Under the pieces are notes generated by a model. It had not been told where the DNA came from and ran no database searches. It saw only the letters and a list, made by a program, of their open reading frames with translations. Made by a program: the position numbers and the translations under genes. A stretch of 64,000 bases of DNA from positions 232,643 to 296,642 of the IMG/VR virus record IMGVR_UViG_3300045135_002615. One strand, written 5' to 3'. Position 1 is the first letter of the stretch, and every line of letters begins with the position of its first letter. Shown here in pieces: positions 6,009-59,072 of this stretch.

Positions 6009-6020
6009 TAGTCTGTTTAT
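6009..6020 (+). promoter_or_regulatory. Putative phage late-promoter motif TAG-N4-TT-WAT (first of 10 exact copies noted)
   Basis: TAGTCTGTTTAT; other copies at 6553, 14540, 14572(-), 16303, 25775, 37751, 39580, 50651(-), 53060. Confidence 0.6.
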
Positions 6021-6066
6021 GGGGGGGCTGATTTATCACAAGCCAACCATGAAGGGTGTTCCCCAT

Positions 6067-6552
6067 ATGAGATACTTGACTTCAAATATGAGCAGGTCTG
6101 TACCGCACATGCCCAATCTTTCCGTAGCACAGAGGAAAGATCTCTTCCGATTAGAGTCGATGCTCTCTTCTACTCAAGAGTATACACAGCTGCCCTCCGC
6201 TTACTCCAAGATGACTCACATATTAAAAAGTAAGGTCTTCACAGACCGGAGTAGCGTAGATGATGCCAGTAACCATATCGAGTCTCTAGGCGTATTAAAA
6301 GATGTCTTTGACAGGGTCAGGAATCACCTCAAAAAAGAGATGGTGAGAGAGTATAAAGAGCTTCTTGCGGATCGTAGGTCTGCGGAGGTGCGTGGTGACA
6401 TTGCACTAGTAGAAGACCTCGAAGATGAGATCTACTTTCATCAGCGGGATTTTAATAAGACTACGGATCGACTCAAACTTATTGATCGTCAATACCGCAC
6501 AGAGATCAATGTACTCGTCAAGCACAAGGTCAGCCTGACCCGTATACGTTGA
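6067..6552 (+). CDS. Hypothetical helical protein
   Basis: Coiled-coil-like ORF; start chosen from SD and leader hairpin position. Confidence 0.65.
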   Translation: MRYLTSNMSRSVPHMPNLSVAQRKDLFRLESMLSSTQEYTQLPSAYSKMTHILKSKVFTDRSSVDDASNHIESLGVLKDVFDRVRNHLKKEMVREYKELLADRRSAEVRGDIALVEDLEDEIYFHQRDFNKTTDRLKLIDRQYRTEINVLVKHKVSLTRIR

Positions 6553-6603
6553 TAGTCTTTTTATAGGTACTCTCTCCTATCAATCCACGATAGGAGAATA
6601 CCT

Positions 6604-8214
6604 ATGTATCCACGTCGCCGTAGGCTGTCTCGCACAGCTTCATTTAATCGCGTTCGCACCGCTTCAACTTCATTACTTCGTCAGCTTCACAAGATTGCGA
6701 GTCCTCAAGAGATTCATCGCAAGTACAAGGGCATCGTCTCTCAGTTCATGTCTGATAAGTATACTGCGATGGACGATGCTATCCATGATACAATCTTTGA
6801 TCCTAATGAAAAGAAGCTAGGGACTCTCAGCCTTCGTGACCTCGTAGAGCTAAAGACTGAGCTCTCAGATGCGGTTGCCGAGCTTAATGATGCTTGGAAC
6901 TCAGCTAAAGCTAATGCTCCTAAGATCAAGGCGATGCTTCAGAGGGAGATGGGTAGTGCCTCCGAGGATGACCTTGAGGTTCTTGAGGGGTACTATGACG
7001 AAATCCAAAGTTTCCTTCGTAATGGACACCCTCTTGCAACATACAACCCTTATGCTGACTTCCTTGTGAAGATTGATGAGGAGATTGAGGAGAGGCGTAC
7101 CGAGGGTGAGGACGATGCTAGGTGGAGACGTGAGCTCACCGAACTAATTGCTGACTTTGAGGATAGCTTGGCAGAGCTTGAGGTCATGGATAGAGAGGTT
7201 CGTAGCTATGCCGATCTTCGCCCTCTTAAGATGGTGAAGGTTGATGTTGATATGCTCCTTGACACTACGGGACTCGGATCAAGTTTCCCTGATCGCTATT
7301 CACGGGGCATACTATCAAGTATAAATATGGACGCCGCTCGTGCTTCAATCGCAAAGAAGAGGCACGAGCTGCTCAACCTCCAAAAGGCACTTCCAAGTGT
7401 CAAGGTCGTAGAGCGTAAGCTCAAGGAGTTTGAGAGCGGTGTTCGTGAGAGACATGATCTCATCCGCCGTGCGAAAGAGGTTGATGCTCACACATGGCAG
7501 ATGAACATTGGTCCTGATGCAGAGAAACTCAAGGGGAAGACCGAACTACTAGAGGCTCGTTCATCAGCTGTCAGAGCTGCAATTACGCTCTATCTGAGAG
7601 ACCTCAAGATTTTCTCCATTACCCTAGCGGGTCAGATTACACGTCTTGAGAAGGTTTATGAGTCATCTCGTGATGTTGAGATCAATGCGAACCTTGCTTC
7701 TGAGAGGAAGATTAAGTATTTGAAGTCTTCTCTCAGAGACATTCAAACTGTCCTCAATCGTGGAGTAAAGTCCTCACGAGACCTTAAGGCTCTTACTGAG
7801 CGGTTTGAAAAGTTAGAGGCTCAGGCACAAGCAGGTGGGTCATCCGTGGTTCGTGAGATTGCACATCAGCTTCGTGATACAAAGGCAGCTCTCAAGTCCG
7901 TTGTGGTCGATGAGGGACTCATGGGTAAGTTTAGAGGTCTCTTCTCTCGCAAGGCTTCTTATGAGTACATGGCAGAGATGGATCGTGTAGCCTCTGATAT
8001 GGGTTACATGGGTTCAGACATAGACATGATGGCAGACGAGTGGATGTCTGACGATCTTGAGGCTGAATTCATGGGAGAGGATCTTGAGGCCGACTTCATG
8101 GCTGAGATGTATGTCGAAGGTGATGACTTCGAGGCTATGGAGGTGATGGCACCTCGCAGGGCTTCAATGAACCGTAGGGCTTCACGCCTCGCCCGTAGAC
8201 ATCTTAGGGGCTAA
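6604..8214 (+). CDS. Coiled-coil protein with Arg-rich R-x-A-S termini and Met/acidic tail; putative virion-internal protein
   Basis: 536-aa ORF; AGGAG SD; RTAS/KIAS at the N-terminus, RKAS/RRAS at the C-terminus. Confidence 0.75.
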   Translation: MYPRRRRLSRTASFNRVRTASTSLLRQLHKIASPQEIHRKYKGIVSQFMSDKYTAMDDAIHDTIFDPNEKKLGTLSLRDLVELKTELSDAVAELNDAWNSAKANAPKIKAMLQREMGSASEDDLEVLEGYYDEIQSFLRNGHPLATYNPYADFLVKIDEEIEERRTEGEDDARWRRELTELIADFEDSLAELEVMDREVRSYADLRPLKMVKVDVDMLLDTTGLGSSFPDRYSRGILSSINMDAARASIAKKRHELLNLQKALPSVKVVERKLKEFESGVRERHDLIRRAKEVDAHTWQMNIGPDAEKLKGKTELLEARSSAVRAAITLYLRDLKIFSITLAGQITRLEKVYESSRDVEINANLASERKIKYLKSSLRDIQTVLNRGVKSSRDLKALTERFEKLEAQAQAGGSSVVREIAHQLRDTKAALKSVVVDEGLMGKFRGLFSRKASYEYMAEMDRVASDMGYMGSDIDMMADEWMSDDLEAEFMGEDLEADFMAEMYVEGDDFEAMEVMAPRRASMNRRASRLARRHLRG

Positions 8215-8785
8215 GCCCAAACTCCCTTCGAGATACAGGCAGGTAGTCAAAGCCAGGTGACACGCTCTCCCCATCGGAGATCTTCTTGCCCTCTTGATCT
8301 ACCTTCATGTTAAAGGTCGCCTTTTCAGCACATGGGCTGAATGTGGCGACCTCTTCTATATTGTCCGCCCACGCCATGAGGTAGGTACTCCCCTCAAATG
8401 GATTACCCTTAAAGTCTGTGCGTAATCCATAAGCAAACACGGGGACTCCGAGTTCATCCGCAACCCGTGTTAAGTCATACACCTGTAGCTTATTCAAGAA
8501 CTGAGACTCATCTACGAATATGACCTTGAGCTCTCTTCGTGCATGCTCTTCAGACACTATCTCAAACAAAGAGCTGTGCTCTTTAAGGGGGGTGGCCTCA
8601 TGCTTAAAGCCCACCCTTGAAGCCACCTGAGCGACACCATCCCTTTTAGCTGCTATAGATGGTATGAGCATCATGAAAGGGATTGATCTCTCATTACAAG
8701 AGTGAGCCCTCATAAGGAGGTTTGCGGTCTTACCCGCATTGACTGTTGAGTAGATAAAGTTTAACAAGGTGACATCTCTCTCCAT
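8204..8785 (-). CDS. tdk: Thymidine kinase
   Basis: FIYSTVNAGKTANLL, IFVDESQF, AYGLRTDFKGNPFEGS..L..AD; true start may lie a few codons downstream. Confidence 0.9.
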   Translation of the reverse strand: MERDVTLLNFIYSTVNAGKTANLLMRAHSCNERSIPFMMLIPSIAAKRDGVAQVASRVGFKHEATPLKEHSSLFEIVSEEHARRELKVIFVDESQFLNKLQVYDLTRVADELGVPVFAYGLRTDFKGNPFEGSTYLMAWADNIEEVATFSPCAEKATFNMKVDQEGKKISDGESVSPGFDYLPVSRREFGLSP

Positions 8786-9387
8786 CCAAAATAGGATGAT
8801 ACTTTGTGGCGAACCTCTTGCACGAGGTTTTTTACTTTTTTACTATCCCACCCATATGTCCTAGCAATGTGTGAAGACTTCATCCCACCCATCATCGCGT
8901 CATACACTTTAAGGGCATCATCGGTGAAGCGACTTCTTACCTCTTCCATGATCATGTCATCCGAGGGGTCTTGGTCATAAGACAAGTCCATAGAGTGTGA
9001 GTGAGAGCTTGAGATGTCCTCCTCAACACCCAACATGGCTTTAGAGCTGTCTTTACGGTGTTTATTGATGACGTTCATTACGATGCAGTTCATCACCATG
9101 ACCACATAGGTTGAGAAAGCTGACTTCTCAGGGTCATAGGGACAAGAACCCTCATTACGGATCATAATCCCTTTGTAGACTTCTTGTAGGACATCTTCCG
9201 GATCAAGTCCTTCCTTAGATACGGAGTGGGCTTGTCTCTTATAGAAGATAAGGCGAACGTCTTGACTTCTTGTATCAAGGTCAATCCCTAGTTTGCGGGG
9301 TTTGACTTGATCAAAACTGAAGGATGCGATAGGAGTGATCCCGATTTGCCATTGACGTGTGGCTTCAATCCCTGAATAACTCGACAT
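8761..9387 (-). CDS. RNA polymerase sigma factor (sigma70 family, ECF/SigH-like size)
   Basis: Region 2-like DPEDVLQEVY..YDPEKSAFSTYV; C-terminal region 4-like HTH GMKSSHIARTYGWDSKKV. Confidence 0.8.
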   Translation of the reverse strand: MSSYSGIEATRQWQIGITPIASFSFDQVKPRKLGIDLDTRSQDVRLIFYKRQAHSVSKEGLDPEDVLQEVYKGIMIRNEGSCPYDPEKSAFSTYVVMVMNCIVMNVINKHRKDSSKAMLGVEEDISSSHSHSMDLSYDQDPSDDMIMEEVRSRFTDDALKVYDAMMGGMKSSHIARTYGWDSKKVKNLVQEVRHKVSSYFGWREMSPC

Positions 9388-9483
9388 GAGAGTCCTTTCG
9401 ATTGGTTCATATTGTCAGCTTCACTCAAGAGCAAGGATTTAGTTGACTTCGAGAACTCGCCTTAAGTGAAAAGCTAGTTGTAA

Positions 9484-9511
9484 ACTATAGTGAATGTATA
9501 AGTGCTGTCAA
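9484..9511 (-). promoter_or_regulatory. sigma70-type promoter for the sigma factor/tdk operon
   Basis: TTGACA-N16-TATAGT on the minus strand. Confidence 0.65.
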
Positions 9512-10963: not shown

Positions 10964-11971
10964 ATGATCGCTGAATATATATGGGTAGATGGTAGTGAAC
11001 CTACGGCTCGTTTGAGATCAAAGACCAAGATTTTTCACGAGGAGGTCGAAGAGTGGCCTCTGTGGTCTTTTGATGGTTCTTCCACTAACCAAGCCACAGG
11101 AGATCGTTCGGATTGTATCCTTCAACCCGCCGCGATCATTAATGACCCTCTCAGGGGAGGAGACAATGTCCTCATTCTCTGTGAGGTGTTTAATGCCGAT
11201 GGGACACCCCACCCAACCAACAACAGAGCTAGGCTTCGTGAAGCCCTTAAAGGGCATGAGGACTTAGACGCATGGGTGGGCTTTGAGCAAGAGTATACTT
11301 TGTTCTCAGGTTCTCGCCCATTAGGGTTTCCTTCTGAACGTAGGTTCCCACCTGCTCAAGGTCCTTATTACTGTGGTGTGGGGTCAGATGAGGTAGCAGG
11401 TAGGGCTCTAGTAGAGAAGCACCTTGATATGTGTCTAAAGGCAAAGATACCTCTTACGGGTATTAATGCTGAGGTCATGCCTGGTCAATGGGAGTACCAA
11501 GTGGGTGGTCCCAATGTAGACCCTCTAGCAGGTTCTGACTTTGTGTGGTTGTCTAGGTGGTTGCTTTACCGCTTAGGTGAACACTATGAGTTAACCGCGA
11601 CCCTCGATCCTAAGCCTGTGCCAGGTGATTGGAATGGTGCGGGTATGCACACAAACTTCTCAACTAGGGCGATGCGTGAAGAGGGTGGTATTGAGGAGAT
11701 ATACAAGGCGGTGGAAACCATTGGCACTCACATCAAGAACCACTTGGATCGCTATGGTAATGGGATTGAGTCTCGTCTAACAGGCTTGCATGAGACATGT
11801 AGATATGACGTATTCAAGTACGGGGTTTCAGACCGTACAGCTTCTATCCGCATCCCTCTTGAGACTGTCAGGAATGGTTGTGGTTACTTTGAGGATCGCA
11901 GACCTAATGCGAATGCTGATCCTTATCTTGTCAGTGAGGCACTTATCCGTAGCATCACGGGGACGTGGTAA
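10964..11971 (+). CDS. glnII: Glutamine synthetase type II
   Basis: AEYIWVDG, WSFDGSST, GFEQEY, QGPYYCGVG, NAEVMPGQWEYQVG, DWNGAGMHTNFST, GYFEDRRP; 335 aa. Confidence 0.95.
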   Translation: MIAEYIWVDGSEPTARLRSKTKIFHEEVEEWPLWSFDGSSTNQATGDRSDCILQPAAIINDPLRGGDNVLILCEVFNADGTPHPTNNRARLREALKGHEDLDAWVGFEQEYTLFSGSRPLGFPSERRFPPAQGPYYCGVGSDEVAGRALVEKHLDMCLKAKIPLTGINAEVMPGQWEYQVGGPNVDPLAGSDFVWLSRWLLYRLGEHYELTATLDPKPVPGDWNGAGMHTNFSTRAMREEGGIEEIYKAVETIGTHIKNHLDRYGNGIESRLTGLHETCRYDVFKYGVSDRTASIRIPLETVRNGCGYFEDRRPNANADPYLVSEALIRSITGTW

Positions 11972-12557: not shown

Positions 12558-12618
12558 GTTACCTCCTCCTTGTTAGATGTTCTATACTAAGTTATATGAG
12601 AGAAAGGGTGGTGTCTAC

Positions 12619-12921
12619 ATGGAAGAAGATTTAGACCTCTTTGGCACGATTGAGATGCTGTTGACATCTTTGTCTTACCACCTTCAGTCTAAAGAAGAAA
12701 TACTGAAGGTGTGGGTTCACTTGGGTGAGAAGATTGGAGTGCAAGACATCTTCCCCCATTCTCAAGTCGTTATCACACAAGACGAAGATGGGAACTATCA
12801 ACCCGTGATGATGGTCTCTTCTCCAACTAAAGAGCTCGTGGACTATATCACCGACTCTGAGTTCTTGACTGATGGTGTGGTAGCCATTTGTCTAGATGAC
12901 ATCAAGAAGCTAGGTCACTAA
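12619..12921 (+). CDS. Hypothetical protein
   Basis: SD before MEEDLDL; TAATG coupling to the next gene. Confidence 0.65.
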   Translation: MEEDLDLFGTIEMLLTSLSYHLQSKEEILKVWVHLGEKIGVQDIFPHSQVVITQDEDGNYQPVMMVSSPTKELVDYITDSEFLTDGVVAICLDDIKKLGH

Positions 12922-13996: not shown

Positions 13997-14535
13997 AGAG
14001 GACACGCCTCATGTGAGGGGTCTTTCTCACCTGCGTAATAGACGGTGACCACATTAACCATAGACCCTTCAACTTCAAATACCACAATCAAGTCACCGAG
14101 TGCTTCTGCTCTCCACTTGAGTCTTTGTCCCATAAAGATACGCTCTTTGATCTGCTCGATGACCCTTGATCTCTTGTTGTAGTTCTGTCGAAGGTATCTA
14201 CCAAACAGGTTGAAGTAAGTCTTTAGGTCACCTATAGTCACACCTCTCTGATCCATACGGAACTGAGCGTGTGTGGTGATCTTCATCCTCTTGAATGTCT
14301 TATCCCCAACTCGTTCAAACTCTAGGTCATAGATATTATGAGTGTACGAGTCAGGGATGGCTTGTCCTTCTTGAACGATTCTCACAAGTTGCCTCTTTAG
14401 TTTAGGGTTTCGGATATTATCCTCGATCCTCCTCTTAGTGTGGCATACTCCGCCTGGGTATCCGAGTGGAGGGTTCAAGTCCGAGATACGCTCAAGTCGA
14501 GCGACCCTCATGATTAGTCGGTCTATCTTGTTCAT
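13993..14535 (-). CDS. DUF4258/RelE-like (BECR-fold) nuclease-like protein with N-terminal extension
   Basis: ITTHAQFRMDQRGVT..LIVVFE..VNVVTVYY. Confidence 0.6.
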   Translation of the reverse strand: MNKIDRLIMRVARLERISDLNPPLGYPGGVCHTKRRIEDNIRNPKLKRQLVRIVQEGQAIPDSYTHNIYDLEFERVGDKTFKRMKITTHAQFRMDQRGVTIGDLKTYFNLFGRYLRQNYNKRSRVIEQIKERIFMGQRLKWRAEALGDLIVVFEVEGSMVNVVTVYYAGEKDPSHEACPL

Positions 14536-14539
14536 TTTT

Positions 14540-14583
14540 TAGCTCCTTTATGTACTTAATGTGATGAATTCATAAAGGAGCTA
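14540..14583. promoter_or_regulatory. Symmetric bidirectional control element (13-bp inverted repeat)
   Basis: TAGCTCCTTTATG-N18-CATAAAGGAGCTA between divergent start codons. Confidence 0.75.
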
Positions 14584-14587
14584 TGAC

Positions 14588-16288
14588 ATGGACCCTATCG
14601 ACCGACTAATCTCAAGCCTCAACAAGAAGGTTATCCGTAAACTCGCCGCTGAAGACCTCCCTACCTTTGAGGAAGCGATCAAGGGAAAGACCTTCAAGAA
14701 CCCTAATACGGGTAATGACGTTCAGTTTGGATCACTCCCTGCCGAAGAGCAGAAGAAGATCCGTGCTGAATATGACAAGAAGGTGGAGGAGCTTGAAGGA
14801 GAGGGTAAGGGTAAGGGAGAGAAGAAGCCTCTCAAAAAGATGACCAAGGTTCAATTGCTTGATCAGCTTGAAGGGGATAAGGACTTCTCAGGGGTTGATC
14901 TCACTAAGTTTAAAGACTTTGATTGGTCAAGTGTGGATTTGAGGGGTGCTAACTTCTCAGGTTCAGACCTGACAGGTGCGTACTTTGGTGTTGGTTCTAG
15001 ACTCGAAGGAGCGAACTTTGAGGGTGCTAATCTTTCAGGTGTCGAGTTCAGAGGGAAAAAGGGTTATGGCGTGAGCCCGTACAGCGATACTCCAGATACT
15101 GTCCATAAAAACGTCAACTTCAAGGGTGCTAATCTTGAAGGTGCGGAGATGTCTTTTCTTCGTTTTGAAAATTCAGATTTAAGCGGTGCTAATCTAAAGG
15201 GTGCTGAGCTTGACGCGGTGATGATAGATAGAAAATGCACCGTAAGAGGTGCTGACTTTGAGGGTGCAACCTTTCATGCCTCCCAATTCAATGGCGTCAA
15301 TCTGAAGGGTGTGAACTTTGCGGGAGCAACCATAAAGTCTGGGGGTGGATATAATAACAGTAGAAGAACCTTCGACAGAGCGAACATCTCAGGTGCAGAC
15401 TTCTCAGGTGCAAACTTCGCCTTCGGTGACGCTTTTAGGTTTGGTGGTAACTTTGGGAAACCCGCCAAAATAAATGGAGCTAAGTTTAGATTTGATGTTC
15501 TAGAAAGTGTGGGAACTAAAGAATTTAAAGCATTTGGCTTTGATAAAGACAATCCTCCTGAAGGCTTGTCCGATAAGGTTCTACATAAAATGGTTGGTGG
15601 TAGGGAGTACCTAGAGTATAGGGAGGCTGAAGAAGATAAAGCTGAAGAAGCTAAAGCTAAGGCTGATGCGGAAGCCAAAGCTAAAGCTGATGAGGAAGCC
15701 AAAGCCAAAGCTAAAGCTGATGAGGAAGCCAAAGCCAAAGCTAAGGCTGATGAGGAAGCTAAAGCTAAGGCTGATGCTGAAGCCAAAGCTAAGGCTGATG
15801 CTGAAGCCAAAGCTAAGGCTAAAGCTGAAGCCAAAGCTAAGGCTGATGCTGAAGCCAAGGCTAAGGCTGATGAGGAAGCCAAAGCTAAAGCTAAGGCTGA
15901 TGAGGAAGCCAAAGCCAAGGCTAAGGCTGATGAGGAAGCCAAAGCTAAAGCTGAGGAAGAAGAGAAGATCAAAGAGAACTCAAAACGTCTTAAAGACCTT
16001 GAGTCTAAGATTAAAGCCGTTAAGAAGAAAGATGATCTCATTGACCTTGTGTCTGAGCTAGGTAGGATGAAGGGTCAACTCTCAAACGCTAAGTTTAAGG
16101 ACAAACTAGAGTCTGAGATGAAGGCTGTCGATAAAGCTGTACAAAACGCGAAAGAGAACACGTCTTTCACGGGTAGGATTAAGAGCTTCTTCGGTCTAGG
16201 TAAAAAGGCAAGGCTCAAGGAAGCCCGACTCTTGCTCAATGGACTTCAGGATGAGATCGAGCATCTCAAGAGGGACATCAACCGCTGA
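14588..16288 (+). CDS. Pentapeptide-repeat protein with Lys/Ala/Glu helical repeat
   Basis: Many A[ND][FL]xG pentapeptides; AKAKADEE/AKAKADAE tandem repeats. Confidence 0.85.
   Translation: MDPIDRLISSLNKKVIRKLAAEDLPTFEEAIKGKTFKNPNTGNDVQFGSLPAEEQKKIRAEYDKKVEELEGEGKGKGEKKPLKKMTKVQLLDQLEGDKDFSGVDLTKFKDFDWSSVDLRGANFSGSDLTGAYFGVGSRLEGANFEGANLSGVEFRGKKGYGVSPYSDTPDTVHKNVNFKGANLEGAEMSFLRFENSDLSGANLKGAELDAVMIDRKCTVRGADFEGATFHASQFNGVNLKGVNFAGATIKSGGGYNNSRRTFDRANISGADFSGANFAFGDAFRFGGNFGKPAKINGAKFRFDVLESVGTKEFKAFGFDKDNPPEGLSDKVLHKMVGGREYLEYREAEEDKAEEAKAKADAEAKAKADEEAKAKAKADEEAKAKAKADEEAKAKADAEAKAKADAEAKAKAKAEAKAKADAEAKAKADEEAKAKAKADEEAKAKAKADEEAKAKAEEEEKIKENSKRLKDLESKIKAVKKKDDLIDLVSELGRMKGQLSNAKFKDKLESEMKAVDKAVQNAKENTSFTGRIKSFFGLGKKARLKEARLLLNGLQDEIEHLKRDINR
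15641..15960 (+). repeat. Coding tandem repeat, 24/30-bp units
   Basis: gaagccaaagctaaggctgat(gag/gct) units encoding EAKAKAD[EA]. Confidence 0.9.
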
Positions 16289-16354
16289 CAATCCTCCCTC
16301 GTTAGTCTTTTAATAGAAGCACCACTCTGAGAGACTAATGAAAGAGGGTGCTCT

Positions 16355-25774: not shown

Positions 25775-25830
25775 TAGTGCTTTTATCAAGACGCTTCATA
25801 ACAACAGAAGCGTCTTGATAGGAGTAGCCT

Positions 25831-28800
25831 ATGTCAGTCCGTAGAGTCCAACTAAGAAGAGGCACGTCTGCTGAGAACAATGCTTTTACAGGTGCGGTGG
25901 GTGAGATCACAGTCGATACAACTCAGAACACAATCCGTGTTCATGATGGGGTGACGGCAGGTGGTACTGAGACGACCCTTCCCGACTTGTCGAACATTGC
26001 TCCTTCAGCAACCGTAGACTTTAACAACCAACGCATTGAGAATGTCCTTGACCCTGTAAATGATCAAGATGTTGCCACTAAAGCATATGTGGACTCAGGT
26101 GGTGGTATCGAGCTGGGTGAACTCATCAACGTCACCCTCAATGCTCCCGCCAATGGTCAGATCATTGTTTATGACTCAGATGGCGGTGCAGAGGACAATC
26201 AATGGAAGAACGTCACTCTCAGTGGGGACATCTCCATTGACAACGCGGGTGTGGCATCTATCGGTTCAGAGGTCATCGTCAACGACGATATCGCTAATGG
26301 GACCATTCAGAATGTTAAGCTCGTCAACGATAGCGTGACCATCGGTGCTACTGAGGTTGTTCTCGGCACCACCGAGACATCATTCAGTGGGCTAACAGGT
26401 CTTGACTTCACAAATGCCGATGCAACTATCGGTGCTTCTATGACCGATGATGGGGCGGGAACCCCTACTGTCCTTACTCTCGGAGGTAATGGCTCTAGAG
26501 TTAAGGTCGCTAATGAACTCCTCGTTGTAGGTGACCTGACAGTTCAAGGTACGACCACTACAGTGGACTCAACTAATGTAGCCGTAGCGGATCGCGTGGT
26601 TGAGCTCAATAAAGACCTGGCGGTAGCTAATGCTAATGACCTCGGTCTGTTCCTCAATAGAGGTACTGAAGATGATGCTCTCATCTTGTGGGACGAGGAC
26701 CTCGGTGGATTCCTTCTCGCTACACATAGTGGTCTTGTAGATAGTTCCACCCTAGACTACTCAAGTGTTGTAGGACTCACACGAGGTGACCTCTACATCG
26801 GCAACCTTGATGTCGAGACTAACACCACTCTCGGTGGTACCCTCGGAGTTACAGGTGTCACGACCCTTACAGGTCTACTCAATGCTAATGGCGGTATCGC
26901 TGTAGATACCAACGCATTTACTGTTGCGGACACTACAGGTAACACCAACATTCAAGGTACTCTTGATGTTGTGGGTAAGTCCACCCTCGCTTCTACTTCT
27001 ACTATCGGTGATCTTGAGTTCACCAATGGTCAGATTCAGACTACGGCTGTAGACAATAACCTGAGCTTCAATGACAACAACCTGTCTACTACAGGTACTC
27101 TCGCTGTAGGCTCAACCACCGTACAAGGTAATAGCTTCATCTCCGTAGAGAAGGGTGCTACACATAGCCTCCTCCTCAACTCAGATGTTGTGGGTGATAA
27201 CACACCCGCCAATGCCTCTATCGGTGTAGCCCTCTCTGATGGTCCTTCATACGCCACGATCACATGGACACAAGCCGATACTACATGGGATGTCTCTCAT
27301 AACATGAGCGTGGCAACTGACCTCACCGTTGGTCAAGACCTCATCGTTACAAGGAACATTGTTCTTACTGATTCTGCCACTCAAGGCATCACCTTCCAAC
27401 ATGACGTTGTTGCAGGTGCAGATGAGACCCTTCTCCGTGTAGACAGAGGGGCAACCTACTCAGTTCTTTCATGGGACGAGAGCTCCGCTTACTTCTCAGT
27501 TAGTCATGGTCTCAATGTTGTTGGTGCTATCTCACAAGGTCCCGTTGATGGTCCTGAGAACTTCAGTGTCTCAAACGCAGGTGTGATCACCACTGATAGC
27601 GATGGACATCGTATCGCAGGTCTTACCTTTAATGGGACTACGATTGAAGCATTCACCAATGGAGCAGGTATCGACTTTGGCGATGAAGACGTAAGCACCA
27701 CGGGTGACTTCTCTGCCGCTAACATCACGTCTACTAGTGACATGACGATCAACACCGCTACCTTCAGTGGGTTGCTCACCGCCAATGGTGGCATCACGGC
27801 TGATGGGGGTGTGTTCACTGTAGCAGATACCACAGGTAATGTCGCTACTACGGGTACACTCTCAGTGACCGGTGATGTTGCAATCAACACCAATAAGTTC
27901 AACATCACAGGAGCTACGGGTGCCGTCAGCCTTGATGGGACTACAGGTGTAATCACCGCCTCAGCAGAGGGTCACTTGATTGCTGACTTCTCTATCTCTG
28001 ATGGTTCTTTCACATCTGCTACTCAGATCATTAACATGGGTACTAATGATGTCACCACAACAGGCGACATCTCCGCTACGGACATTACATCCACTGGCGA
28101 CATGACCATCAACACGGCTACTGCGACAGGGCTTGTCCAAGCAGATGGTGGTCTAAATGTTAATGATGCGTTCACTGTGGCTGCTAATGGTGATGTTGTC
28201 ACAAGTGGGACAGCCGATCTAGGTGCAACCACCGTAGATAGCCTCAATGTGAGCAACGCTAACATCACCTCTGTTGGTGCGATCCAACTTGATACGATCC
28301 AATCAGCAGGTGATGCGGTCTCTTTCGACATCCTCCTTGATGACAACCAAGCAACCGCTCTTGAGATCAAAGAGGGAGCTAACGTCTATCAGACCTTCGT
28401 CACTACGGACGCAGGTGAGAAGGTTGTCTTTGGCAAGCTCATTGAAGCACCTGATAGCTCAGTGGTGGCTAACTTCACCTTTAGTGGTAGCACCATTAGC
28501 TCAAGCACTGACAGCATGGACATTGGTAATGATGCTCTGACTACTACAGGTACGGGTACGTTTGGCTCTCTTGATGTAAGTGGTGGCAACATTGTAGACG
28601 CTGGTGATGTGGCTCTTGATACGATCTCACCTGCGGGTGCTTCAGTGGTCGTTGATCTTCCTGATAATGGCGGGGTTGCGTTCTCTATCGTAGATGATCT
28701 TGGTGGAGCTAATCAGACCAACTACTTGCAGGTCACTACAACAACAGGTCTTGAGGAGGTCACTCTCCCTCAGCGTACTCGTGTACAGGGTCAGTTCCAT

Positions 28801-36295: not shown

Positions 36296-36363
36296 TTGCT
36301 TTCGTTGGACATTTATGTCTATAGTTGATGTCACTCAACATTTGATCTAAGGAGGCTAAGTCC

Positions 36364-37750: not shown

Positions 37751-37799
37751 TAGACTTTTAATGGGAGAACTCCTTATGTGCCTACAGAGGAGTTGTGCC

Positions 37800-39574: not shown

Positions 39575-39626
39575 AGTTTTAGATCGTTAATAGAGCCCCT
39601 TCTCAGACAACACAACAGGAGGGGTT

Positions 39627-40859: not shown

Positions 40860-40914
40860 TTTTTTATTCCTTTTATTGTGTCCTTCTATGGCAACTTCCA
40901 TTTGGAGAATGTAT

Positions 40915-50620: not shown

Positions 50621-50659
50621 GGGGACACCTCCTGGTAGAAAAGCGACCCCATAAAACGA

Positions 50660-50866
50660 CTACTGATCCCTCTCAGCTTCCTTCAACCACTCACCAATGA
50701 GCTGAGGATATAGGTACATATAGTCAGGGGAAGTCCGACCCCTCAGCCCCTCCATTAGCTCTTGTCTCTCTTGGGCATCAAGAGGGACGCCTTTTTCTAG
50801 GTCGCGGATCATCTCATGTGCTCTTAAGCATAGAGCTCTGAGCCGGTACTCCTCGTTGTGTTCCAT
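50660..50866 (-). CDS. Hypothetical protein
   Basis: 68-aa ORF; GGAG SD. Confidence 0.55.
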   Translation of the reverse strand: MEHNEEYRLRALCLRAHEMIRDLEKGVPLDAQERQELMEGLRGRTSPDYMYLYPQLIGEWLKEAERDQ

Positions 50867-53055: not shown

Positions 53056-53104
53056 GCCATAGTTCCTTTATAAAGGTCGATATAGGTCTAATAAGGGGTT
53101 GACT

Positions 53105-54521: not shown

Positions 54522-54662
54522 AACACCCCCTAAGTAAATCACATTAAGGTGGGAGAGTGGGCAGTCAGGGGCTTGAACCCTGGACCGTCGGTTTATGAGA
54601 CCGATGCTCTGACCAACTGAGCTAACTGCCCATGTCTTAATGTGATTTACTTAGAGGGTGTT
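54522..54662. repeat. 27-bp inverted repeat enclosing the tRNA(CAT) gene
   Basis: AACACCCCCTAAGTAAATCACATTAAG (54522-54548) and CTTAATGTGATTTACTTAGAGGGTGTT (54636-54662); 1 mismatch. Confidence 0.9.
54558..54631 (-). tRNA. tRNA with CAT anticodon (Ile2 more likely than elongator Met), no encoded CCA
   Basis: GGGCAGT/ACTGCCC acceptor with C4-G69, TCGGT-CT-CAT-AA-ACCGA; no initiator features. Confidence 0.9.
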
Positions 54663-54742
54663 ATCAACCCTATACGAGCCTGCATCCTAACCGAGTATGA
54701 CAAGCGGAAGACCATGCAGGGAACTTCCTTAGAGTTGAGTAG

Positions 54743-54815
54743 TACACTCAGCAGGGCTCGAACCTGCGACCTACACGTTAGGAATGTGTTGCTCTTCCTA
54801 CTGAGCTATGAGTGC
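54743..54815 (-). tRNA. tRNA-Arg(CCT), no encoded CCA
   Basis: GCACTCA/TGAGTGT acceptor, ACACA-TT-CCT-AA-CGTGT, GGTTCGAGCCC. Confidence 0.9.
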
Positions 54816-54819
54816 TTAG

Positions 54820-54892
54820 TACACCAAGTAGGGCTCGAACCTACGACCTACGGTTTAGAAGACCGTTGCTCTTCCGACTGAGCTATTGGTGC
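54820..54892 (-). tRNA. tRNA-Arg(TCT), no encoded CCA
   Basis: GCACCAA/TTGGTGT acceptor, ACGGT-CT-TCT-AA-ACCGT, GGTTCGAGCCC. Confidence 0.95.
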
Positions 54893-54936: not shown

Positions 54937-54938
54937 AT

Positions 54939-55534: not shown

Positions 55535-55584
55535 GCGTTGTCCTTTCTTTAGATTATTTGTTTATACCAGAGCAACTTGGTTAT

Positions 55585-55612: not shown

Positions 55613-55634
55613 CTTTGTATACAAGGAGGTTATC

Positions 55635-55982
55635 ATGTCCACATACACAACCATTCAAGAAGGTGAGCGTGTTTGGGTTTTAGACAACTCAGAGGTTCTG
55701 AGCTTCTTCTTGTTGCAAAACACTTATGAGAGAGATGGTGGTTTAGGTATTTCACCCTTCGTCTACCGTTGGTTGAAGGACGTGCTCTTAGAGATCGGGT
55801 TTAAGAGGTCTCTGACCTCAAGGTTCATACTCTATATTGGAGACCTTGAGGGAGTGCGTGTAGAAGCGGATTTCACAGACAAAGGGGTGTTTTTACGAAA
55901 CGAGACTAGGACTATAGAGCTAGTCAAGTTGGAAATGTTGTTTTCATTGATAAGGCTTTTATGGAGGGAGTATGCTATGTGA
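55635..55982 (+). CDS. Divergent GKR-family paralog
   Basis: YTTIQEGERVW, VLLEIGF, LIRLLWRE; AAGGAGG SD. Confidence 0.65.
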   Translation: MSTYTTIQEGERVWVLDNSEVLSFFLLQNTYERDGGLGISPFVYRWLKDVLLEIGFKRSLTSRFILYIGDLEGVRVEADFTDKGVFLRNETRTIELVKLEMLFSLIRLLWREYAM

Positions 55983-56012
55983 CTCTATAAGAGACATGAA
56001 AGGACTTCCTAT

Positions 56013-57392
56013 ATGGCAACAAGAGCACAAAGACTAAAAAAGATACATGACCTACATGAACAAATCGCAAGAGAAACACCTCAGACAGAAAGTCAGCTTG
56101 TGCGTCGGCTCATGTTCGCCAATGGGATGACTGAGGCAGATGTCAGGGCAACTTCTAACTCTTCACTGACTGAGTTTGGTCGTCTAGTTTATAGGGCGTA
56201 CCCTGACAATAAGTACTACTTTAGGTTGGTCTTCACCTTCGGTGTTAAGATCGGGTTCGCCCCCGAAGGTAGATATGGAGGCATCCCTTCACTATCTTCG
56301 ATCAACACTCTTTACTACAAGCTCAAGCGGGAGTCCAAAGCTCAGACGAAGAAGGCTTCTATAGATTTGTTCTACGCAGTAGATTCATGGATGGAGATGA
56401 ATGCCCAAGACATTGACTACATGTTAGTGAAAACACCCCTTTCTTCGTCATCCGGTAAGATTGTCACACATGGTCTACTTAAGCCCATGGTCATTGCTTT
56501 ATGTGATAATCTCAACCAAGCGTTCCCTCAAGGGGTATTCAGTGTTGTCTTATCTACCATTTATTTTGACGCTTCTGAGGGTCATGAGCGTATCGCGTCT
56601 AAAAAAAAAAGTGAAGATGAGGTAGAGGAGGAGGCACTAGAGTTGTTGGCTGACAATGTCCCTAGTTTGCCTATTCCTTCTTCTTTAAAGTCTGATCTGA
56701 AGAAGGACGTAGTAGGTAATAAGAACCTAGTGTCAAAGGGTGTAATCCACACATGGAAACCGTTGAAGGTTCGTGTTGTCAAGGACACCTGGCTCATCCT
56801 TTTGAATGGTACTCCTGAAGAGAAAGCGGCATTTAAGAGAGGCTTTCTAAAATCTGAAGAAAAAGACGAGATGTCTCACGTCCTTGAGGGTTTAGACGCT
56901 CAGCTTGCACTTGCTATTAAGAAAATGCAGGGTCTTCAAACGAGTGATAAAGAGCTAAAAATCAAGAGGGCAGAGCAGGCAGGGTCACTGTTGAAGGGTA
57001 GCCTTCAAGCATCCGGGATGATTGTTTTATTTGCGTTTATTTTCTTGTACTTTAAAGGCGATCCCTACGCAGAGAGTGTTGTAGGGGGTGTGAGTGGAGG
57101 TCTCACGTTTATCTTTAAAGCTATTATCATGGCGGTAAAAGGGATTTCAGGTCCCTTTTCGATTTACTTTTTAGCCTCCACCTTCTATATACCTTTCAGT
57201 AAGACACTCGGCTATCGAGAGGGCACACTCAAGATGCTGAGAGACCTTAAAGATAAGCTCAAGACCAATACCTTTGGGCTCATGCACTACTTGTCAGACA
57301 AGTTTAATATGTTCAAGGGAGGGGTGGTGAAACTCGTAGGGAACGTGTACGAGAGGGTAGTTCGTAAGTTCAGGCGAGCTTCTTATTGCTAA
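56013..57392 (+). CDS. Hypothetical membrane protein with KKAS/RIAS/RRAS motifs
   Basis: Hydrophobic helices in the C-terminal third; AAAGGA SD. Confidence 0.7.
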   Translation: MATRAQRLKKIHDLHEQIARETPQTESQLVRRLMFANGMTEADVRATSNSSLTEFGRLVYRAYPDNKYYFRLVFTFGVKIGFAPEGRYGGIPSLSSINTLYYKLKRESKAQTKKASIDLFYAVDSWMEMNAQDIDYMLVKTPLSSSSGKIVTHGLLKPMVIALCDNLNQAFPQGVFSVVLSTIYFDASEGHERIASKKKSEDEVEEEALELLADNVPSLPIPSSLKSDLKKDVVGNKNLVSKGVIHTWKPLKVRVVKDTWLILLNGTPEEKAAFKRGFLKSEEKDEMSHVLEGLDAQLALAIKKMQGLQTSDKELKIKRAEQAGSLLKGSLQASGMIVLFAFIFLYFKGDPYAESVVGGVSGGLTFIFKAIIMAVKGISGPFSIYFLASTFYIPFSKTLGYREGTLKMLRDLKDKLKTNTFGLMHYLSDKFNMFKGGVVKLVGNVYERVVRKFRRASYC

Positions 57393-57437
57393 GTCGTTTA
57401 TCATCTCCTTGTGTCAGTTGAGACATAAGGAGGTCAT

Positions 57438-59072
57438 GTGTCCTACTCTAATATGCAAGCTCTGCAAAAGGCAATCGTTAAAAAAAAACAAAGAGAGGTC
57501 ATCTTACCCCCCCAAGAACCACCTCTTATCTCATCGAGCGAGGGTGGTACCGGACTCTACTTAGTAGGGGGTAATAATGGTGAAATATACTCTAGTGGTG
57601 ACATCACGATAGGTCCCTTAGCGAGGGGTGTCTATAATGAGAACTACTCTAAAAACACCATCCTACATGGGCAGGATGATGAGTTAAGCCATGTGGCAGG
57701 TTATGTCTCCATAAGAGGTGGACACATAGCTAATGATGGTTTTCCTGGTTTTCAAGGGGGCACTGTTTATGTTCTTGGAGGAAGGGCGAATGGTGGGTTA
57801 GATGGAGCTGGAACATCCACATGGGGTGGGGACGTAAATGTTATAGCCCCTGGCAGGGGAGTGACCCGTAATTCGGGTCATACCGTGAATATGACCCCTT
57901 ACTCGGGTGGTCTTCAAGTTGGGACACTAACTACCGAGGGAGAAGTCAACTCAGGGGATGTGGTCATTGGAACAGGGGCAGGGACAGAGGCAGGTCATTT
58001 AAGTGGGGATATGACTCTCTCGACAGGGGGTACGGTTGATGGTCAAGTAGGTAGTGTTTTCATTAGTACAGGAGAGACCGCAAGTGGCTTGAGTGGGGAC
58101 ATTGAGATGTCTACCTCTGCTCTAGATTCTGCATCTAGTTCGGGGTATATTATTTTAGAGACAGGTGAGAACCCATCAGGGGATGTAGGGGCTATTGTTA
58201 TCAGAGGAGGTGCTTCTTCACTTAATAATGCACCAGGTAATGTAAGTATCGCAGGAGGTGATCTTGTAGATTATGCAGGAGGGGGTATGGGCTTAGGTGG
58301 GGATGTGTTAATTAGAGGTGGTAGTGTTGAAGGCACTGTTACATCTTCCGCAATCGCAAATGCCGTCAATATCTCAGGTGGTGATGTTTATCCTGATAAT
58401 GCAGGAGACCCCACATATACATGGACAGGTGGTAGTGTCACCATTGAGGGAGGTCTTGCCATAGACTTAACAGGGGCATCCACTACAAGGCGTGGGAATG
58501 TCACTCTGCGGGGTCACTACCTGTTTATGGAAGTCGAAGAGCCTGTAGATTTCTCGTCGTCAGGTATCCAAGCCTTTGCCCCGGACACGCAGGATAGAAG
58601 GCTACCTTTGATTGGGGCAGATGGAATACTCTCTGCTTTGGGCGTGTCCGTCTTAGGTGTGGGGAAATTCAATGTGACTATCCCAGCGGGTAGTCACATC
58701 TACCATCTCTATATGGGGATGAGGAACTACACACTTAATGCAAGTGGCCCTGTGGCAGTACTAGGTGAAGATGCTACAGGTACCCCCATCTACCCTATTT
58801 GTGCAGAGACGTACACAGGGTATGGAGCTACCTATCCTGCATACCTTTACTATGAGCCTAAAGTGTTCTTCTCCATTAGAACCATTTCTAATGGAGCGTT
58901 TGTTGAGATTGCATCAACCCCTATAGCTACAGAAACCTTCACAACCATTTCAGGGGTATATTTAAATCTCATCCAGTTCTCATCACAGGCACCAAATAGC
59001 CAGGTAGATGGACTTAAGAACTTAGGTAACTTTGATGCTGAGGTAGAGATAAACTACTTAGTCTTAGGCTAA
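57438..59072 (+). CDS. Gly-rich beta-repeat virion protein (fibre/spike-like)
   Basis: Repeated G[DNS]V.I.[GT]G units; GTG start after AAGGAGG. Confidence 0.7.
   Translation: MSYSNMQALQKAIVKKKQREVILPPQEPPLISSSEGGTGLYLVGGNNGEIYSSGDITIGPLARGVYNENYSKNTILHGQDDELSHVAGYVSIRGGHIANDGFPGFQGGTVYVLGGRANGGLDGAGTSTWGGDVNVIAPGRGVTRNSGHTVNMTPYSGGLQVGTLTTEGEVNSGDVVIGTGAGTEAGHLSGDMTLSTGGTVDGQVGSVFISTGETASGLSGDIEMSTSALDSASSSGYIILETGENPSGDVGAIVIRGGASSLNNAPGNVSIAGGDLVDYAGGGMGLGGDVLIRGGSVEGTVTSSAIANAVNISGGDVYPDNAGDPTYTWTGGSVTIEGGLAIDLTGASTTRRGNVTLRGHYLFMEVEEPVDFSSSGIQAFAPDTQDRRLPLIGADGILSALGVSVLGVGKFNVTIPAGSHIYHLYMGMRNYTLNASGPVAVLGEDATGTPIYPICAETYTGYGATYPAYLYYEPKVFFSIRTISNGAFVEIASTPIATETFTTISGVYLNLIQFSSQAPNSQVDGLKNLGNFDAEVEINYLVLG

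What the first reader, a model, noticed from the sequence alone, without database searches (positions are those of the whole stretch)
6009..57438. Regulon-wide promoter motif paired with a ribosome-site-hiding hairpin
Seen: exact TAG-N4-TT-(T/A)AT copies at 6009, 6553, 14540, 14572(-), 16303, 25775, 37751, 39580, 50651(-) and 53060, with near copies at 36305, 40865, 55951 and 57390. Each lies 30-50 nt before a start codon, mostly of structural-type genes. In nearly every case the leader pairs with its own SD or start region, using a different sequence each time. Examples: TCTCCTATC/GATAGGAGA (6573-6597); AGCACC.CTCT/AGAG.GGTGCT (gene 16355); TATCAAGACGCTTC/GAAGCGTCTTGATA extendable over GGAG (25784-25824); AACTCCT/AGGAGTT (gene 37800); AGCCCCTTCT/AGGAGGGGTT (gene 39627); ATCTCCTTGTGTC/GACATAAGGAGGT (57403-57434). 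Established: T4 uses a late promoter inside an RBS-occluding hairpin for a few genes (e, 49, soc, I-TevI), so read-through early mRNA is not translated. Inference: here the trick is generalised to the whole late regulon, in a genome where early and late genes are interleaved; the encoded sigma factor (8761-9387) is one candidate reader of the motif.
Basis: partly seen in the sequence, partly recalled or inferred. Interest (0 to 1): 0.85.

Follow-up and report, generated by a model that had tools for sequence, protein, structure and literature searches.

The report
Phage late promoter with ribosome-site hairpins
An uncultivated 297-kb marine phage puts one short promoter-like motif in front of about 78 mostly structural genes, and at 40% of them the leader folds into a hairpin that hides the ribosome-binding site; this resembles a known phage T4 trick but is used far more widely and mainly between neighbouring late genes.

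Summary
The motif is real. TAG-N4-TTWAT occurs 12 times in the window against 3 expected. A refined matrix, tTaATA(G/a)-N4-TTTAT, marks 78 of about 327 genes in the 296,642-bp phage genome, always 39-62 nt before a start codon. It is a single element with no -35 box. It precedes tail-fibre, baseplate and virion genes, and it recurs in metagenomic relatives that share the phage's sigma2-sigma4 sigma factor.

The hairpin claim is only partly right. 31 of 78 motif leaders (8 of 14 in the window) fold far better than shuffles, against 13 of 249 other leaders. That is a real excess, but not "nearly every case". These hairpins begin 0-2 nt after TTTAT, end at the ATG, cover the SD, lack a T-run and show compensatory changes in orthologues.

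They concentrate where another copy of the motif lies upstream on the same strand (17/27 vs 14/51), not at non-late-to-late junctions. The T4-like mechanism, in which the promoter's own transcript loses the 5' arm, remains the best reading. Its likely purpose is to insulate late cistrons from read-through, not to gate early against late expression. No start site could be mapped, and the sigma-to-motif link is inferred.

The parts
6009..6020 (+). Motif copy (17.7 bits). Start at 6067, or 6019 in the JGI call of the orthologue. No significant leader hairpin (z -0.3).
6553..6564 (+). Motif copy (21.5 bits) abutting the TGA stop of the upstream gene. Precedes the 536-aa gene that starts at 6604.
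6565..6603 (+). Leader hairpin, -18 kcal/mol, z -5.9. The SD GGAG lies in the 3' arm. With the motif included, UAU (6562-6564) pairs with AUG (6604-6606). Compensatory change in orthologue L033.
12574..12585 (+). Start at 12619. No hairpin.
14540..14551 (+). Motif copy of a divergent pair. Start at 14588. No hairpin. Its complement supplies the SD of the opposite gene.
14572..14583 (-). Motif copy of the divergent pair. Start at 14535. No hairpin.
16303..16314 (+). Motif copy before the 3139-aa tail-fibre gene that starts at 16355.
16315..16354 (+). Leader hairpin, -14.7 kcal/mol, z -3.3. Flush with both the motif and the ATG.
25775..25786 (+). Motif copy abutting the TAA stop of tail-fibre gene 1. 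Precedes the 3113-aa tail gene that starts at 25831.
25787..25817 (+). 11-bp leader hairpin (leader fold -21.2 kcal/mol, z -6.5). The helix can be extended into the motif, so the SD is paired only in RNA that contains the motif.
37751..37762 (+). Motif copy abutting a TAA stop. Precedes the tail-fibre-like gene that starts at 37800.
37763..37799 (+). Leader hairpin, -17.2 kcal/mol, z -3.4. Covers the SD.
39580..39591 (+). Motif copy (TTAAT variant) before the 410-aa gene that starts at 39627.
39594..39626 (+). Leader hairpin, -13.9 kcal/mol, z -3.4. Kept in the 96%-identical relative L035 despite a 5-nt insertion, with one A-U to G-C double change.
40865..40876 (+). Weaker motif copy (TAT instead of TAG, 12.6 bits). 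Start at 40915. No significant hairpin.
50651..50662 (-). Motif copy. Start at 50620.
50621..50650 (-). Leader hairpin, -15.4 kcal/mol, z -3.1. Flush with both the motif and the ATG.
53060..53071 (+). Motif copy before the Laminin_G_3 virion-protein gene that starts at 53105. First of its run. No hairpin.
55951..55962 (+). Motif copy (TAA variant, 15.7 bits). Start at 56013.
55965..56010 (+). Leader hairpin, -13.3 kcal/mol, z -2.2.
57390..57401 (+). Motif copy (TAA variant, 12.5 bits). GTG start at 57438.
57403..57434 (+). 13-bp leader hairpin, -19 kcal/mol, z -4.3. Covers the SD.
8761..9387 (-). Phage sigma factor with sigma2, a disordered linker and a sigma4 helix-turn-helix. It is the only sigma-like ORF found in the genome and the candidate reader of the motif.
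9484..9511 (-). Near-consensus host-type promoter (TTGACA-N16-TATAGT) in front of the sigma gene. One of only two such sites in the genome.

Best explanation
The motif tTaATA(G/a)-N4-TTTAT is a single-element promoter with no -35 box. It serves the late, mostly virion-structural gene class of a 297-kb uncultivated aquatic phage and its relatives. The most likely reader is host RNA polymerase carrying the phage's own sigma2-sigma4 sigma factor, whose gene sits behind a near-consensus host sigma70-type promoter.

At about 40% of these promoters the whole leader is one hairpin. It begins 0-2 nt after TTTAT, ends at the ATG, holds the SD in its 3' arm, and in RNA that still contains the motif pairs UAU of the motif with AUG. 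The hairpins are mostly at internal promoters, inside runs of same-strand late genes.

Proposed mechanism: RNA that reads through from an upstream promoter carries the full hairpin and is translated poorly at that cistron. RNA started at the cistron's own promoter lacks the motif part. If it starts 7-10 nt past TTTAT, as at phiEco32 single-element phage-sigma promoters, it also lacks half or more of the 5' arm and is translated. The effect is to make each late gene's output depend on its own promoter, which is insulation rather than early/late timing.

Shown here: motif, position, gene class, hairpin enrichment, geometry, context dependence, conservation in relatives, sigma fold. Inferred: promoter activity, late timing, sigma as reader, start-site position, effect on translation.
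For: MOTIF STATISTICS AND POSITION. 29 of the 78 copies sit at junctions where my gene calls put a divergent neighbour, with gaps as short as 52 nt, where a promoter is needed. No -35 element: maximum information upstream is 0.13 bit.

GENE CLASS: downstream genes with any PHROG hit are baseplate, tail-fibre or virion proteins. Large genes without the motif are helicases, methyltransferases, RNR, PhoH and primase.

HAIRPINS: 31/78 vs 13/249, p = 1e-12. 25/31 start <=2 nt after the motif, 26/31 end within 3 nt of the ATG, and 0/31 have a T-run.

PREDICTED PAIRING IN THE STRONG-HAIRPIN LEADERS:
- P(AUG paired) is 0.75 with the motif in the RNA and 0.20 without it.
- P(SD paired) is 0.88 with the motif, 0.69 for a start at +7 and 0.50 at +10. 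The background in other leaders is 0.48.
- In a separate fold of the first motif set, mean dG goes from -18.7 (start at +0) to -9.2 (+7) and -5.9 (+10) kcal/mol.

CONTEXT: hairpins are commoner when a long same-strand ORF ends <=40 nt upstream (21/39 vs 10/39, MWU p = 5e-4). They are commonest after another copy of the motif (17/27 vs 14/51, p = 0.003).

RELATIVES: contigs with sigma 33-95% identical carry the same motif-leader units. Orthologous leaders keep the helix through A-U to G-C double changes.

SIGMA. Its sigma70-type promoter.

PRECEDENTS: T4 e/soc/49/I-TevI (PMC3014915). phiEco32 gp36 single-element promoter with starts 6-8 bp downstream (PMC8948821).
Against: - No transcription start, no RNA data and no host; no RNA run was listed.
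- 60% of motif leaders have no significant hairpin.
- With a start only 7 nt past the motif, 39% of the strong hairpins would still keep the SD >0.8 paired, so relief would be partial.
- An alternative register (TAG as T-12/A-11, start right after TTTAT) cannot be excluded. It would leave the hairpin intact on every transcript.
- One orthologue (L034) has two uncompensated changes in the outer helix.
- The sigma has a sigma4 domain but the motif has no -35 box. A second promoter class (nTATAA, 53 genes by the rule) also needs a reader.
- Gene calls and start choices are my own simple caller's.
Confidence: 0.5

Rival explanations
1. 5'-terminal stabiliser. Transcription starts right after TTTAT, so every promoter-initiated mRNA carries the hairpin flush at its 5' end. 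That protects it from 5'-end-dependent decay (RNase E/RppH or RNase J). Overlap with the SD is then a by-product of a 35-45-nt leader.
For: 25/31 hairpins start within 2 nt of the motif's end. The first base after the motif avoids T and is A or G in 68%, as expected of a start. 5' hairpins are known to stabilise mRNAs, for example T4 gene 32 (cited in PMC8948821) and ompA (my own knowledge).
Against: - Hairpin presence depends on what lies upstream, which a 5'-end function does not predict.
- The helix is also flush with the ATG and continues into the motif as UAU.AUG.
- An SD locked in a -14 to -27 kcal/mol helix on every transcript would cripple structural-gene translation.
- A start immediately after a -10-like element is unusual for sigma70-family holoenzymes.
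Confidence: 0.17
2. Intercistronic processing or 3'-end stabiliser. The hairpins are double-strand RNase (RNase III-type) sites or exonuclease blocks that cut or protect polycistronic late RNA between cistrons, as with the promoter-plus-RNase III site units of phage T7.
For: Enrichment at late-to-late junctions directly after a stop codon. Stems of 10-16 bp reach 13-21 bp with the motif extension. The T7 arrangement is from my own knowledge.
Against: - The 3' arm covers the SD in nearly all strong cases (P 0.85-0.88) and ends at the ATG, which a stabiliser does not need.
- Stems are shorter than typical RNase III substrates and have no conserved internal loop.
- 10 of 39 promoters without a nearby upstream same-strand ORF also have hairpins.
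Confidence: 0.13
3. Constitutive translational throttle. The hairpin stays on all transcripts and simply sets a low translation rate, or awaits a phage factor, for low-copy virion parts such as the giant tail fibres.
For: Both giant tail-fibre genes and several tail-fibre-like genes carry hairpins. Hairpin strengths span a continuum.
Against: Does not explain the dependence on an upstream same-strand promoter or the helix abutting the promoter. Most products are unannotated, so copy number could not be compared.
Confidence: 0.12
4. The motif is an RNA-level signal (binding or cleavage site) and not a promoter.
For: It lies inside the transcribed intergenic space of co-directional genes, often directly after the stop codon.
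Against: It occurs in divergent intergenic regions of 52-53 nt, where both genes need a promoter and nothing else is conserved. It is AT-rich and -10-like. A comparable second motif class (nTATAA) occupies the same position at other genes.
Confidence: 0.05

Closest known systems
Phage T4 genes e, soc, 49 and I-TevI: late promoter combined with an RBS-sequestering hairpin (PMC3014915)
   Same: The SD and/or AUG is locked in a helix with upstream leader sequence. A short single-element late promoter sits at the 5' strand. Transcripts from farther upstream would carry the whole helix.
   Different: - T4 has a handful of genes; here there are 31 of 78 promoters, conserved across a clade.
- In T4 the promoter lies in the DNA that encodes the 5' strand. 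Here the 5' strand starts just after the motif, and only UAU is shared.
- The T4 logic is early versus late. Here hairpins cluster downstream of other late promoters.
- The start sites here are unknown.
Single-element phage-sigma promoters: T4 gp55 (TATAAATA) and phiEco32 gp36 (tAATGTAtA, start 6-8 bp downstream; PMC8948821)
   Same: A short AT-rich element with no -35 box, upstream of middle or late genes, in a phage that encodes its own sigma-family protein and no RNA polymerase.
   Different: The sequence differs: it is bipartite within 12 nt (TA..., 5 nt, TTTAT). phiEco32 gp36 lacks region 4 (PMC8948821), and so does gp55 (my own knowledge), whereas this sigma has a predicted sigma4 helix-turn-helix. 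Recognition has not been tested.
Phage T7 internal promoters followed by RNase III hairpins (my own knowledge)
   Same: Promoter-then-hairpin units repeated between co-directional late genes.
   Different: The T7 hairpins are longer, have a conserved internal loop, do not contain the SD, and follow promoters for the phage's own single-subunit polymerase.
'Moraphages', aquatic 200-307-kb phages with a core sigma factor, some with glutamine synthetase, and no RNA polymerase (PMC12619734)
   Same: Genome size, aquatic origin, a sigma factor, a glutamine-synthetase-like gene next to the sigma locus in a close relative, and no RNAP domains found.
   Different: Membership was not tested phylogenetically. 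That paper predicts Bacteroidota hosts, whereas this phage has strong SD sequences before nearly all genes. A term search of that paper found the word 'promoter' only once.

Membership tests
T4-type promoter-in-hairpin translational control | The SD and/or start codon is sequestered in a helix with upstream leader sequence. | tested here: met
   31/78 leaders have z <= -2. P(SD paired) is 0.85-0.88. Compensatory changes occur in orthologues.
T4-type promoter-in-hairpin translational control | Transcripts from the stage-specific promoter start inside or beyond the 5' strand. | not testable with these tools
   No RNA run was listed. The geometry allows it only if the start is >=7-10 nt past TTTAT.
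T4-type promoter-in-hairpin translational control | Longer EARLY transcripts read through the site. | tested here: not met
   By proxy only. Hairpins are associated with same-strand upstream ORFs, but chiefly after another late-type promoter (17/27) and rarely after the other promoter class (1/9).
Single-element (-10-only) phage-sigma promoters | A short conserved AT-rich element with no -35 box, upstream of one gene class. | tested here: met
Single-element (-10-only) phage-sigma promoters | Recognition by the phage sigma holoenzyme. | not testable with these tools
   Only co-occurrence of the sigma and the motif in relatives.
sigma70 family, two-domain (ECF/SigH-like) sigma factors | A sigma2 and a sigma4 domain joined by a linker. 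| tested here: met
   All 29 of 29 family members hit TIGR02937, below its cut-off, across both domains. PDB 3mzy sigma-H matches at 1.4e-5. The AF2 model has pLDDT 84, and all Foldseek hits are sigma factors.
sigma70 family, two-domain (ECF/SigH-like) sigma factors | A bipartite -35/-10 cognate promoter. | tested here: not met
   Nothing is conserved 5-45 nt upstream of the motif.
Intrinsic (rho-independent) terminators | A GC-rich hairpin followed by a U-tract. | tested here: not met
   0 of 31 strong hairpins have >=6 T in the next 10 nt.
5'-terminal stabiliser hairpins (ompA type) | The hairpin lies within a few nt of the mRNA 5' end, irrespective of upstream genes. | tested here: inconclusive
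   The 5' end is unknown. Dependence on upstream context argues against it.
Multisubunit-RNAP jumbo phages (phiKZ/AR9 type) | Phage-encoded beta/beta' homologues. | tested here: not met
   PF00562 and PF00623 gave no match in the genome. Very divergent homologues could be missed.

The most novel reading that the evidence does not exclude
A clade of huge aquatic phages uses a promoter-coupled translational insulator. Internal late promoters are each fused to an RBS-occluding hairpin that the promoter's own start site trims away. Every late cistron in a terminator-less run is therefore translated only from its own promoter's transcripts. This would generalise the T4 e/soc device from a few genes to dozens, and turn it from a timing device into a stoichiometry device.
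Probability: 0.35. Interest if true: 0.7.

Novelty: new variant of a known kind. Interest (0 to 1): 0.55.

Why it matters
It gives a precise, testable promoter consensus and a candidate sigma factor for a widespread group of uncultivated phages of 200 kb and more, whose gene expression is otherwise a blank.

If the mechanism holds, it also shows that the textbook T4 device of a promoter inside an RBS hairpin can be a general design principle. It would decouple the translation of neighbouring genes that are transcribed without terminators. Such a natural insulator would interest both phage biologists and designers of synthetic operons.

The motif itself is a practical annotation tool. It fixes start codons (for example 6604, where the collection's gene call is 48 codons shorter) and flags structural genes among ORFs with no homologues.

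Tried and rejected
- RNA evidence: no RNA run was listed for the 410-aa gene region, so start sites could not be mapped.
- Read laying on four estuary or aquatic DNA runs holding a relative about 94% identical: it showed the relative, but the variant list was cut before the leaders, so it added nothing to the covariation question.
- The search for related loci with the 410-aa protein (viral contigs) and with the 536-aa protein alignment (metagenome contigs): no relatives. Homologue searches for those two proteins gave only 2-3 orthologues.
- No cultured relative: the sigma hits only one uncultured 485-kb phage record in the phage collection, and megablast of 8 kb found nothing.
The giant ORFs are tail fibres, not N4-like virion polymerases.
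- Bipartite sigma70 promoters as a general class: not enriched, 19 against 23-42 in shuffles.
- A -35 box for the motif: none.
- A start-site signature after the motif: no clear one.
- Terminator reading of the hairpins: rejected.
- Ranking hairpin strength against virion copy number: sheath, capsid and terminase Pfam models gave nothing usable.
- 36305 as a motif copy, and 41611 and 61026 as functional copies: rejected.


Full report
SETTING. The window is the last 64 kb (232,643-296,642) of a 296,642-bp IMG/VR virus record. The record is 47% G+C, uses the standard code and is 95% coding by a simple ORF caller. Its best DNA holder is a seawater metagenome, and relatives occur in estuary and aquatic runs. 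It has no close relative among 50,697 deposited phage records. It has no detectable beta or beta' RNA-polymerase domains. The two giant ORFs in the window (3139 and 3113 aa) are tail-fibre or tail proteins, not virion polymerases.

THE MOTIF IS REAL.
- The exact pattern occurs 12 times in the window against 3.06 expected, and no shuffle reached 12. Genome-wide it occurs 50 times against 9 for a reversed control.
- 38 of the 50 copies sit 40-70 nt before a start on the same strand, nearly all at 40-58 nt.
- The aligned sites extend the consensus to t-T-a-A-T-A-(G/a)-t-y-y-t-T-T-T-A-T-a. The invariant core is TA, then 5 nt, then TTTAT.
- An iterated matrix restricted to upstream regions finds 78 genes at >=9 bits. 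About 1.6 are expected from shuffled upstream windows, and 0 of 224 coding windows score that high. The TAG-to-start distance is 39-62 nt for 76 of the 78.
- In 30 of the 78 the three bases before TAG are TAA or TGA. By an ORF-based test, a long upstream ORF's stop abuts the motif in 19, and in 7 more the motif's own TAG is that stop.
- Nothing is conserved 5-45 nt upstream (maximum 0.13 bit), so this is a single-element signal.
- In the window 14 sites pass.
- 36305 fails. The exact matches at 41611 and 61026 are not near starts.

WHY I READ IT AS A PROMOTER FOR THE LATE CLASS.
- The motif is strand-specific and keeps a fixed distance from starts.
- It is present on both strands of divergent intergenic regions as short as 52 nt, where each gene needs a promoter and nothing else is conserved.
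- At 14540/14572 the two copies are reverse complements 20 nt apart, and each one's complement supplies the AAGGAG of the opposite gene.
- Motif genes with any PHROG hit are baseplate wedge, baseplate, tail fibre, minor tail or virion proteins.
- Large genes without the motif are helicases, DNA methyltransferases, ribonucleotide reductase, PhoH and primase.
- A second promoter-like class, nTATAA 25-50 nt before starts, precedes 53 other genes by the rule.
- Classical bipartite sigma70 promoters are not enriched. The only two near-consensus ones drive a tRNA pair (565-592) and the sigma gene (9511-9484, minus strand).

THE SIGMA FACTOR.
- ORF 8761-9387(-) is weakly sigma-like on its own: PF04542 at 1e-3 and phrog_1740 at 2e-6.
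- It heads a family of 81 metagenomic proteins, some on contigs of 100-500 kb.
- The family has an almost invariant region-2 block and a C-terminal helix-turn-helix.
- All 29 aligned members match the sigma70/ECF superfamily model across both domains, though below its cut-off.
- The family profile hits sigma-H structure 3mzy at 1.4e-5.
- The AlphaFold model has pLDDT 84, with two helical domains and a disordered linker at 120-138. Its Foldseek matches are all sigma factors: SigH, ECF sigma L/K/E/H, sigma32 and sigmaS.
- It is the only sigma-like ORF in the genome.
- Its link to this motif rests on co-occurrence only. There are two phage-specific promoter classes and one detected sigma, and a sigma4 domain with no -35 box to read. 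I give the link about 0.5.

THE HAIRPINS.
- I folded each leader from the base after TTTAT to the start codon. 31 of 78 motif leaders have z <= -2 against dinucleotide shuffles, compared with 13 of 249 other leaders. Other leaders were taken at matched length, and the excess also holds against those with >=35 nt of non-coding sequence upstream. Odds ratio 12, p = 1.2e-12 (earlier versions).
- Several 'non-motif' hairpin leaders in an earlier pass had TAA variants of the motif. The refined matrix then captured them.
- Anti-SD tetramers are enriched in the first 20 nt of motif leaders, 32% against 12%.
- Geometry is regular. 25 of 31 helices start within 2 nt of the motif, 26 of 31 end within 3 nt of the ATG, and 9 are flush on both sides. 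In the flush cases UAU of the motif continues the helix onto AUG.
- None is followed by a T-run.
But 60% of motif leaders, including six in the window, are ordinary.

RELATIVES.
- Contigs encoding sigma orthologues of 33-95% identity come from lakes, estuaries and other waters. They carry the same motif at the same distance from starts, with the same mix of open and hairpinned leaders. One example is a 13-bp helix flush with both motif and ATG in L030.
- Orthologous leaders keep the structure. The leader of the 536-aa gene (6553) differs from L032 by a C to U change that keeps a G.U pair. It differs from L033 (protein 45% identical) by a rebuilt outer helix, including an A-U to G-C double change. 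The UAU.AUG closure persists in both.
- L034 has two uncompensated changes in the outer helix but keeps the SD helix.
- The 39580 leader in L035 has a 5-nt insertion and an A-U to G-C double change, and still folds at -14 to -19 kcal/mol.

WHAT THE HAIRPINS ARE FOR. Three observations bear on this.
1. What is paired depends on where the RNA begins. The dG row comes from the first motif set (21 strong leaders); the pairing rows come from the 31 strong leaders of the refined set.

| Strong-hairpin leaders | RNA includes motif | starts at +0 | starts at +7 | starts at +10 |
|---|---|---|---|---|
| P(AUG paired) | 0.75 | 0.20 | 0.28 | 0.40 |
| P(SD paired) | 0.88 | 0.85 | 0.69 | 0.50 |
| mean dG (kcal/mol) | not run | -18.7 | -9.2 | -5.9 |

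   The genomic background for P(SD paired) in other leaders is 0.48. At 25775 the SD is paired only with motif bases, so any promoter-initiated RNA frees it.
2. Hairpins depend on upstream context. 21 of 39 promoters with a long same-strand ORF ending within 40 nt upstream have one, against 10 of 39 without (MWU p = 5e-4).
3. The decisive upstream feature is another copy of the same motif. Hairpins occur in 17 of 27 when the nearest upstream same-strand promoter is class B, in 1 of 9 when it is the nTATAA class, and in 13 of 42 when the strand switches first. B-to-B against the rest gives p = 0.003.

In the window the first promoters of runs (6009, 14540, 53060) are open. The following ones (6553; 16303 and 25775; 55951 and 57390) are closed.

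WHAT FOLLOWS FROM THIS. Context dependence argues against a pure 5'-end stabiliser. SD and AUG coverage and the lack of T-runs argue against terminators and, less strongly, against mere processing sites.

The reading that fits all three observations is insulation. Read-through RNA from an upstream late promoter carries the closed leader, and the cistron's own transcript carries an opened one. This needs a start 7-10 nt past TTTAT. That is what phiEco32 gp36 promoters show (6-8 bp, PMC8948821), and T4 late promoters are similar (my own knowledge). It also fits the register in which the TAT of TTTAT aligns with the TAT of the nTATAA class, since both classes then have similar distances to the ATG. 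It remains unproven, and the sequence after the motif shows no clear start signature.

COMPARISON WITH WHAT IS KNOWN.
- T4. The mechanism class is that of T4 e, soc, 49 and I-TevI (PMC3014915). The differences are scale (31 promoters, clade-wide), placement (the 5' arm lies after the promoter element and does not overlap it) and context (within late runs).
- Promoter type. It resembles the single-element promoters of T4 gp55 and phiEco32 gp36, but with a different sequence and a sigma that keeps region 4.
- T7. The repeated promoter-hairpin units recall T7's promoter-RNase III units (my own knowledge).
- Moraphages. The phage may belong to or lie near the recently named 'moraphages': aquatic, 200-307 kb, core sigma factor, glutamine synthetase in some, no RNAP (PMC12619734). 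I did not test this. Its near-universal strong SD sequences sit oddly with the Bacteroidota hosts predicted there.

VERDICT. It is a new variant of a known kind: a well-defined late-promoter consensus for an uncultivated huge-phage clade, coupled at 40% of sites to RBS-occluding leader hairpins whose distribution points to insulation between late cistrons. Confidence by claim:

| Claim | Confidence |
|---|---|
| Motif is a promoter signal | about 0.9 |
| Hairpins are real and under selection | about 0.9 |
| Motif genes are the late class | about 0.75 |
| The phage sigma reads the motif | about 0.5 |
| Start-site trimming mechanism | about 0.45-0.5 |

LIMITS. Gene calls and start choices come from my own simple caller, although orthologue N-termini support it at 6604. 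Folding is prediction only. There is no expression data of any kind.

Noticed in passing
window 565-592 (+) and 9484-9511 (-): These are the only two near-consensus TTGACA-N16-TATAAT/TATAGT promoters in the whole 297-kb genome. One precedes tRNA-Glu and tRNA-Lys and the other precedes the sigma-factor gene. This suggests the host holoenzyme first makes the phage tRNAs and the phage sigma.
   Followed up: partly
whole genome; in the window e.g. before 9537, 41828 and 3158: A second promoter-like class, nTATAA with no -35 box, lies 25-50 nt before 53 mostly non-structural genes. Only 7 of these 53 leaders have a strong hairpin. Its reader is unknown.
   Followed up: partly
window 14536-14587: A 52-nt divergent intergenic region holds two reverse-complementary motif copies. 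The complement of each promoter (ATAAAGGAGCTA) is the Shine-Dalgarno region of the opposite gene. A similar pair lies at genome 41050/41071.
   Followed up: partly
window 634-705, 1074-1146, 54557-54631, 54742-54815, 54819-54892: Five tRNA genes: Glu-TTC, Lys-TTT, Met-CAT, Arg-CCT and Arg-TCT.
   Followed up: no
window 25831-35172: The 3113-aa tail protein begins with an Mtd_N (major tropism determinant N-terminal) domain, E 1e-10. I did not look for a diversity-generating retroelement. The genome holds about ten further ORFs of 1000-2900 aa.
   Followed up: no
window 14588-16288 and several genomic paralogues: Pentapeptide-repeat proteins form a multi-copy family: 3 of the motif genes and 4 of the large non-motif genes. 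They are also present next to the sigma locus in relative L030.
   Followed up: no
genome 5004, 76524, 81662, 83007, 104954, 220300 (outside the window): At least six paralogous genes start MRHLT(A/T)SQKIA. Each has its own motif promoter and an open leader.
   Followed up: no
window 6604-8214: The public collection's copy of this protein is 488 aa, about 48 codons shorter than my call. Orthologues in L032, L033 and L034 conserve the N-terminus from the ATG at 6604, which is also where the motif and SD point.
   Followed up: yes
window 10964-11971; L032 404-1414: A 335-aa ORF near the sigma locus corresponds in position and size to a glutamine-synthetase-like gene (Gln-synt_N/C) in the 95%-identical relative. 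This is an auxiliary metabolic gene also reported for 'moraphages' (PMC12619734).
   Followed up: no
genome 1-60 and 296431-296490 (window 63789-63848): The first 60 nt of the record recur 212 nt before its end. The contig ends therefore overlap, from terminal redundancy or a circular assembly, though the overlap is not identical over its whole length.
   Followed up: partly
window 37800 and upstream: In the estuary relatives (runs X2-X4) homology to the window breaks exactly at the start codon at 37800. Upstream they carry different sequence, which suggests modular exchange of tail-fibre-like genes at promoter-leader junctions.
   Followed up: no
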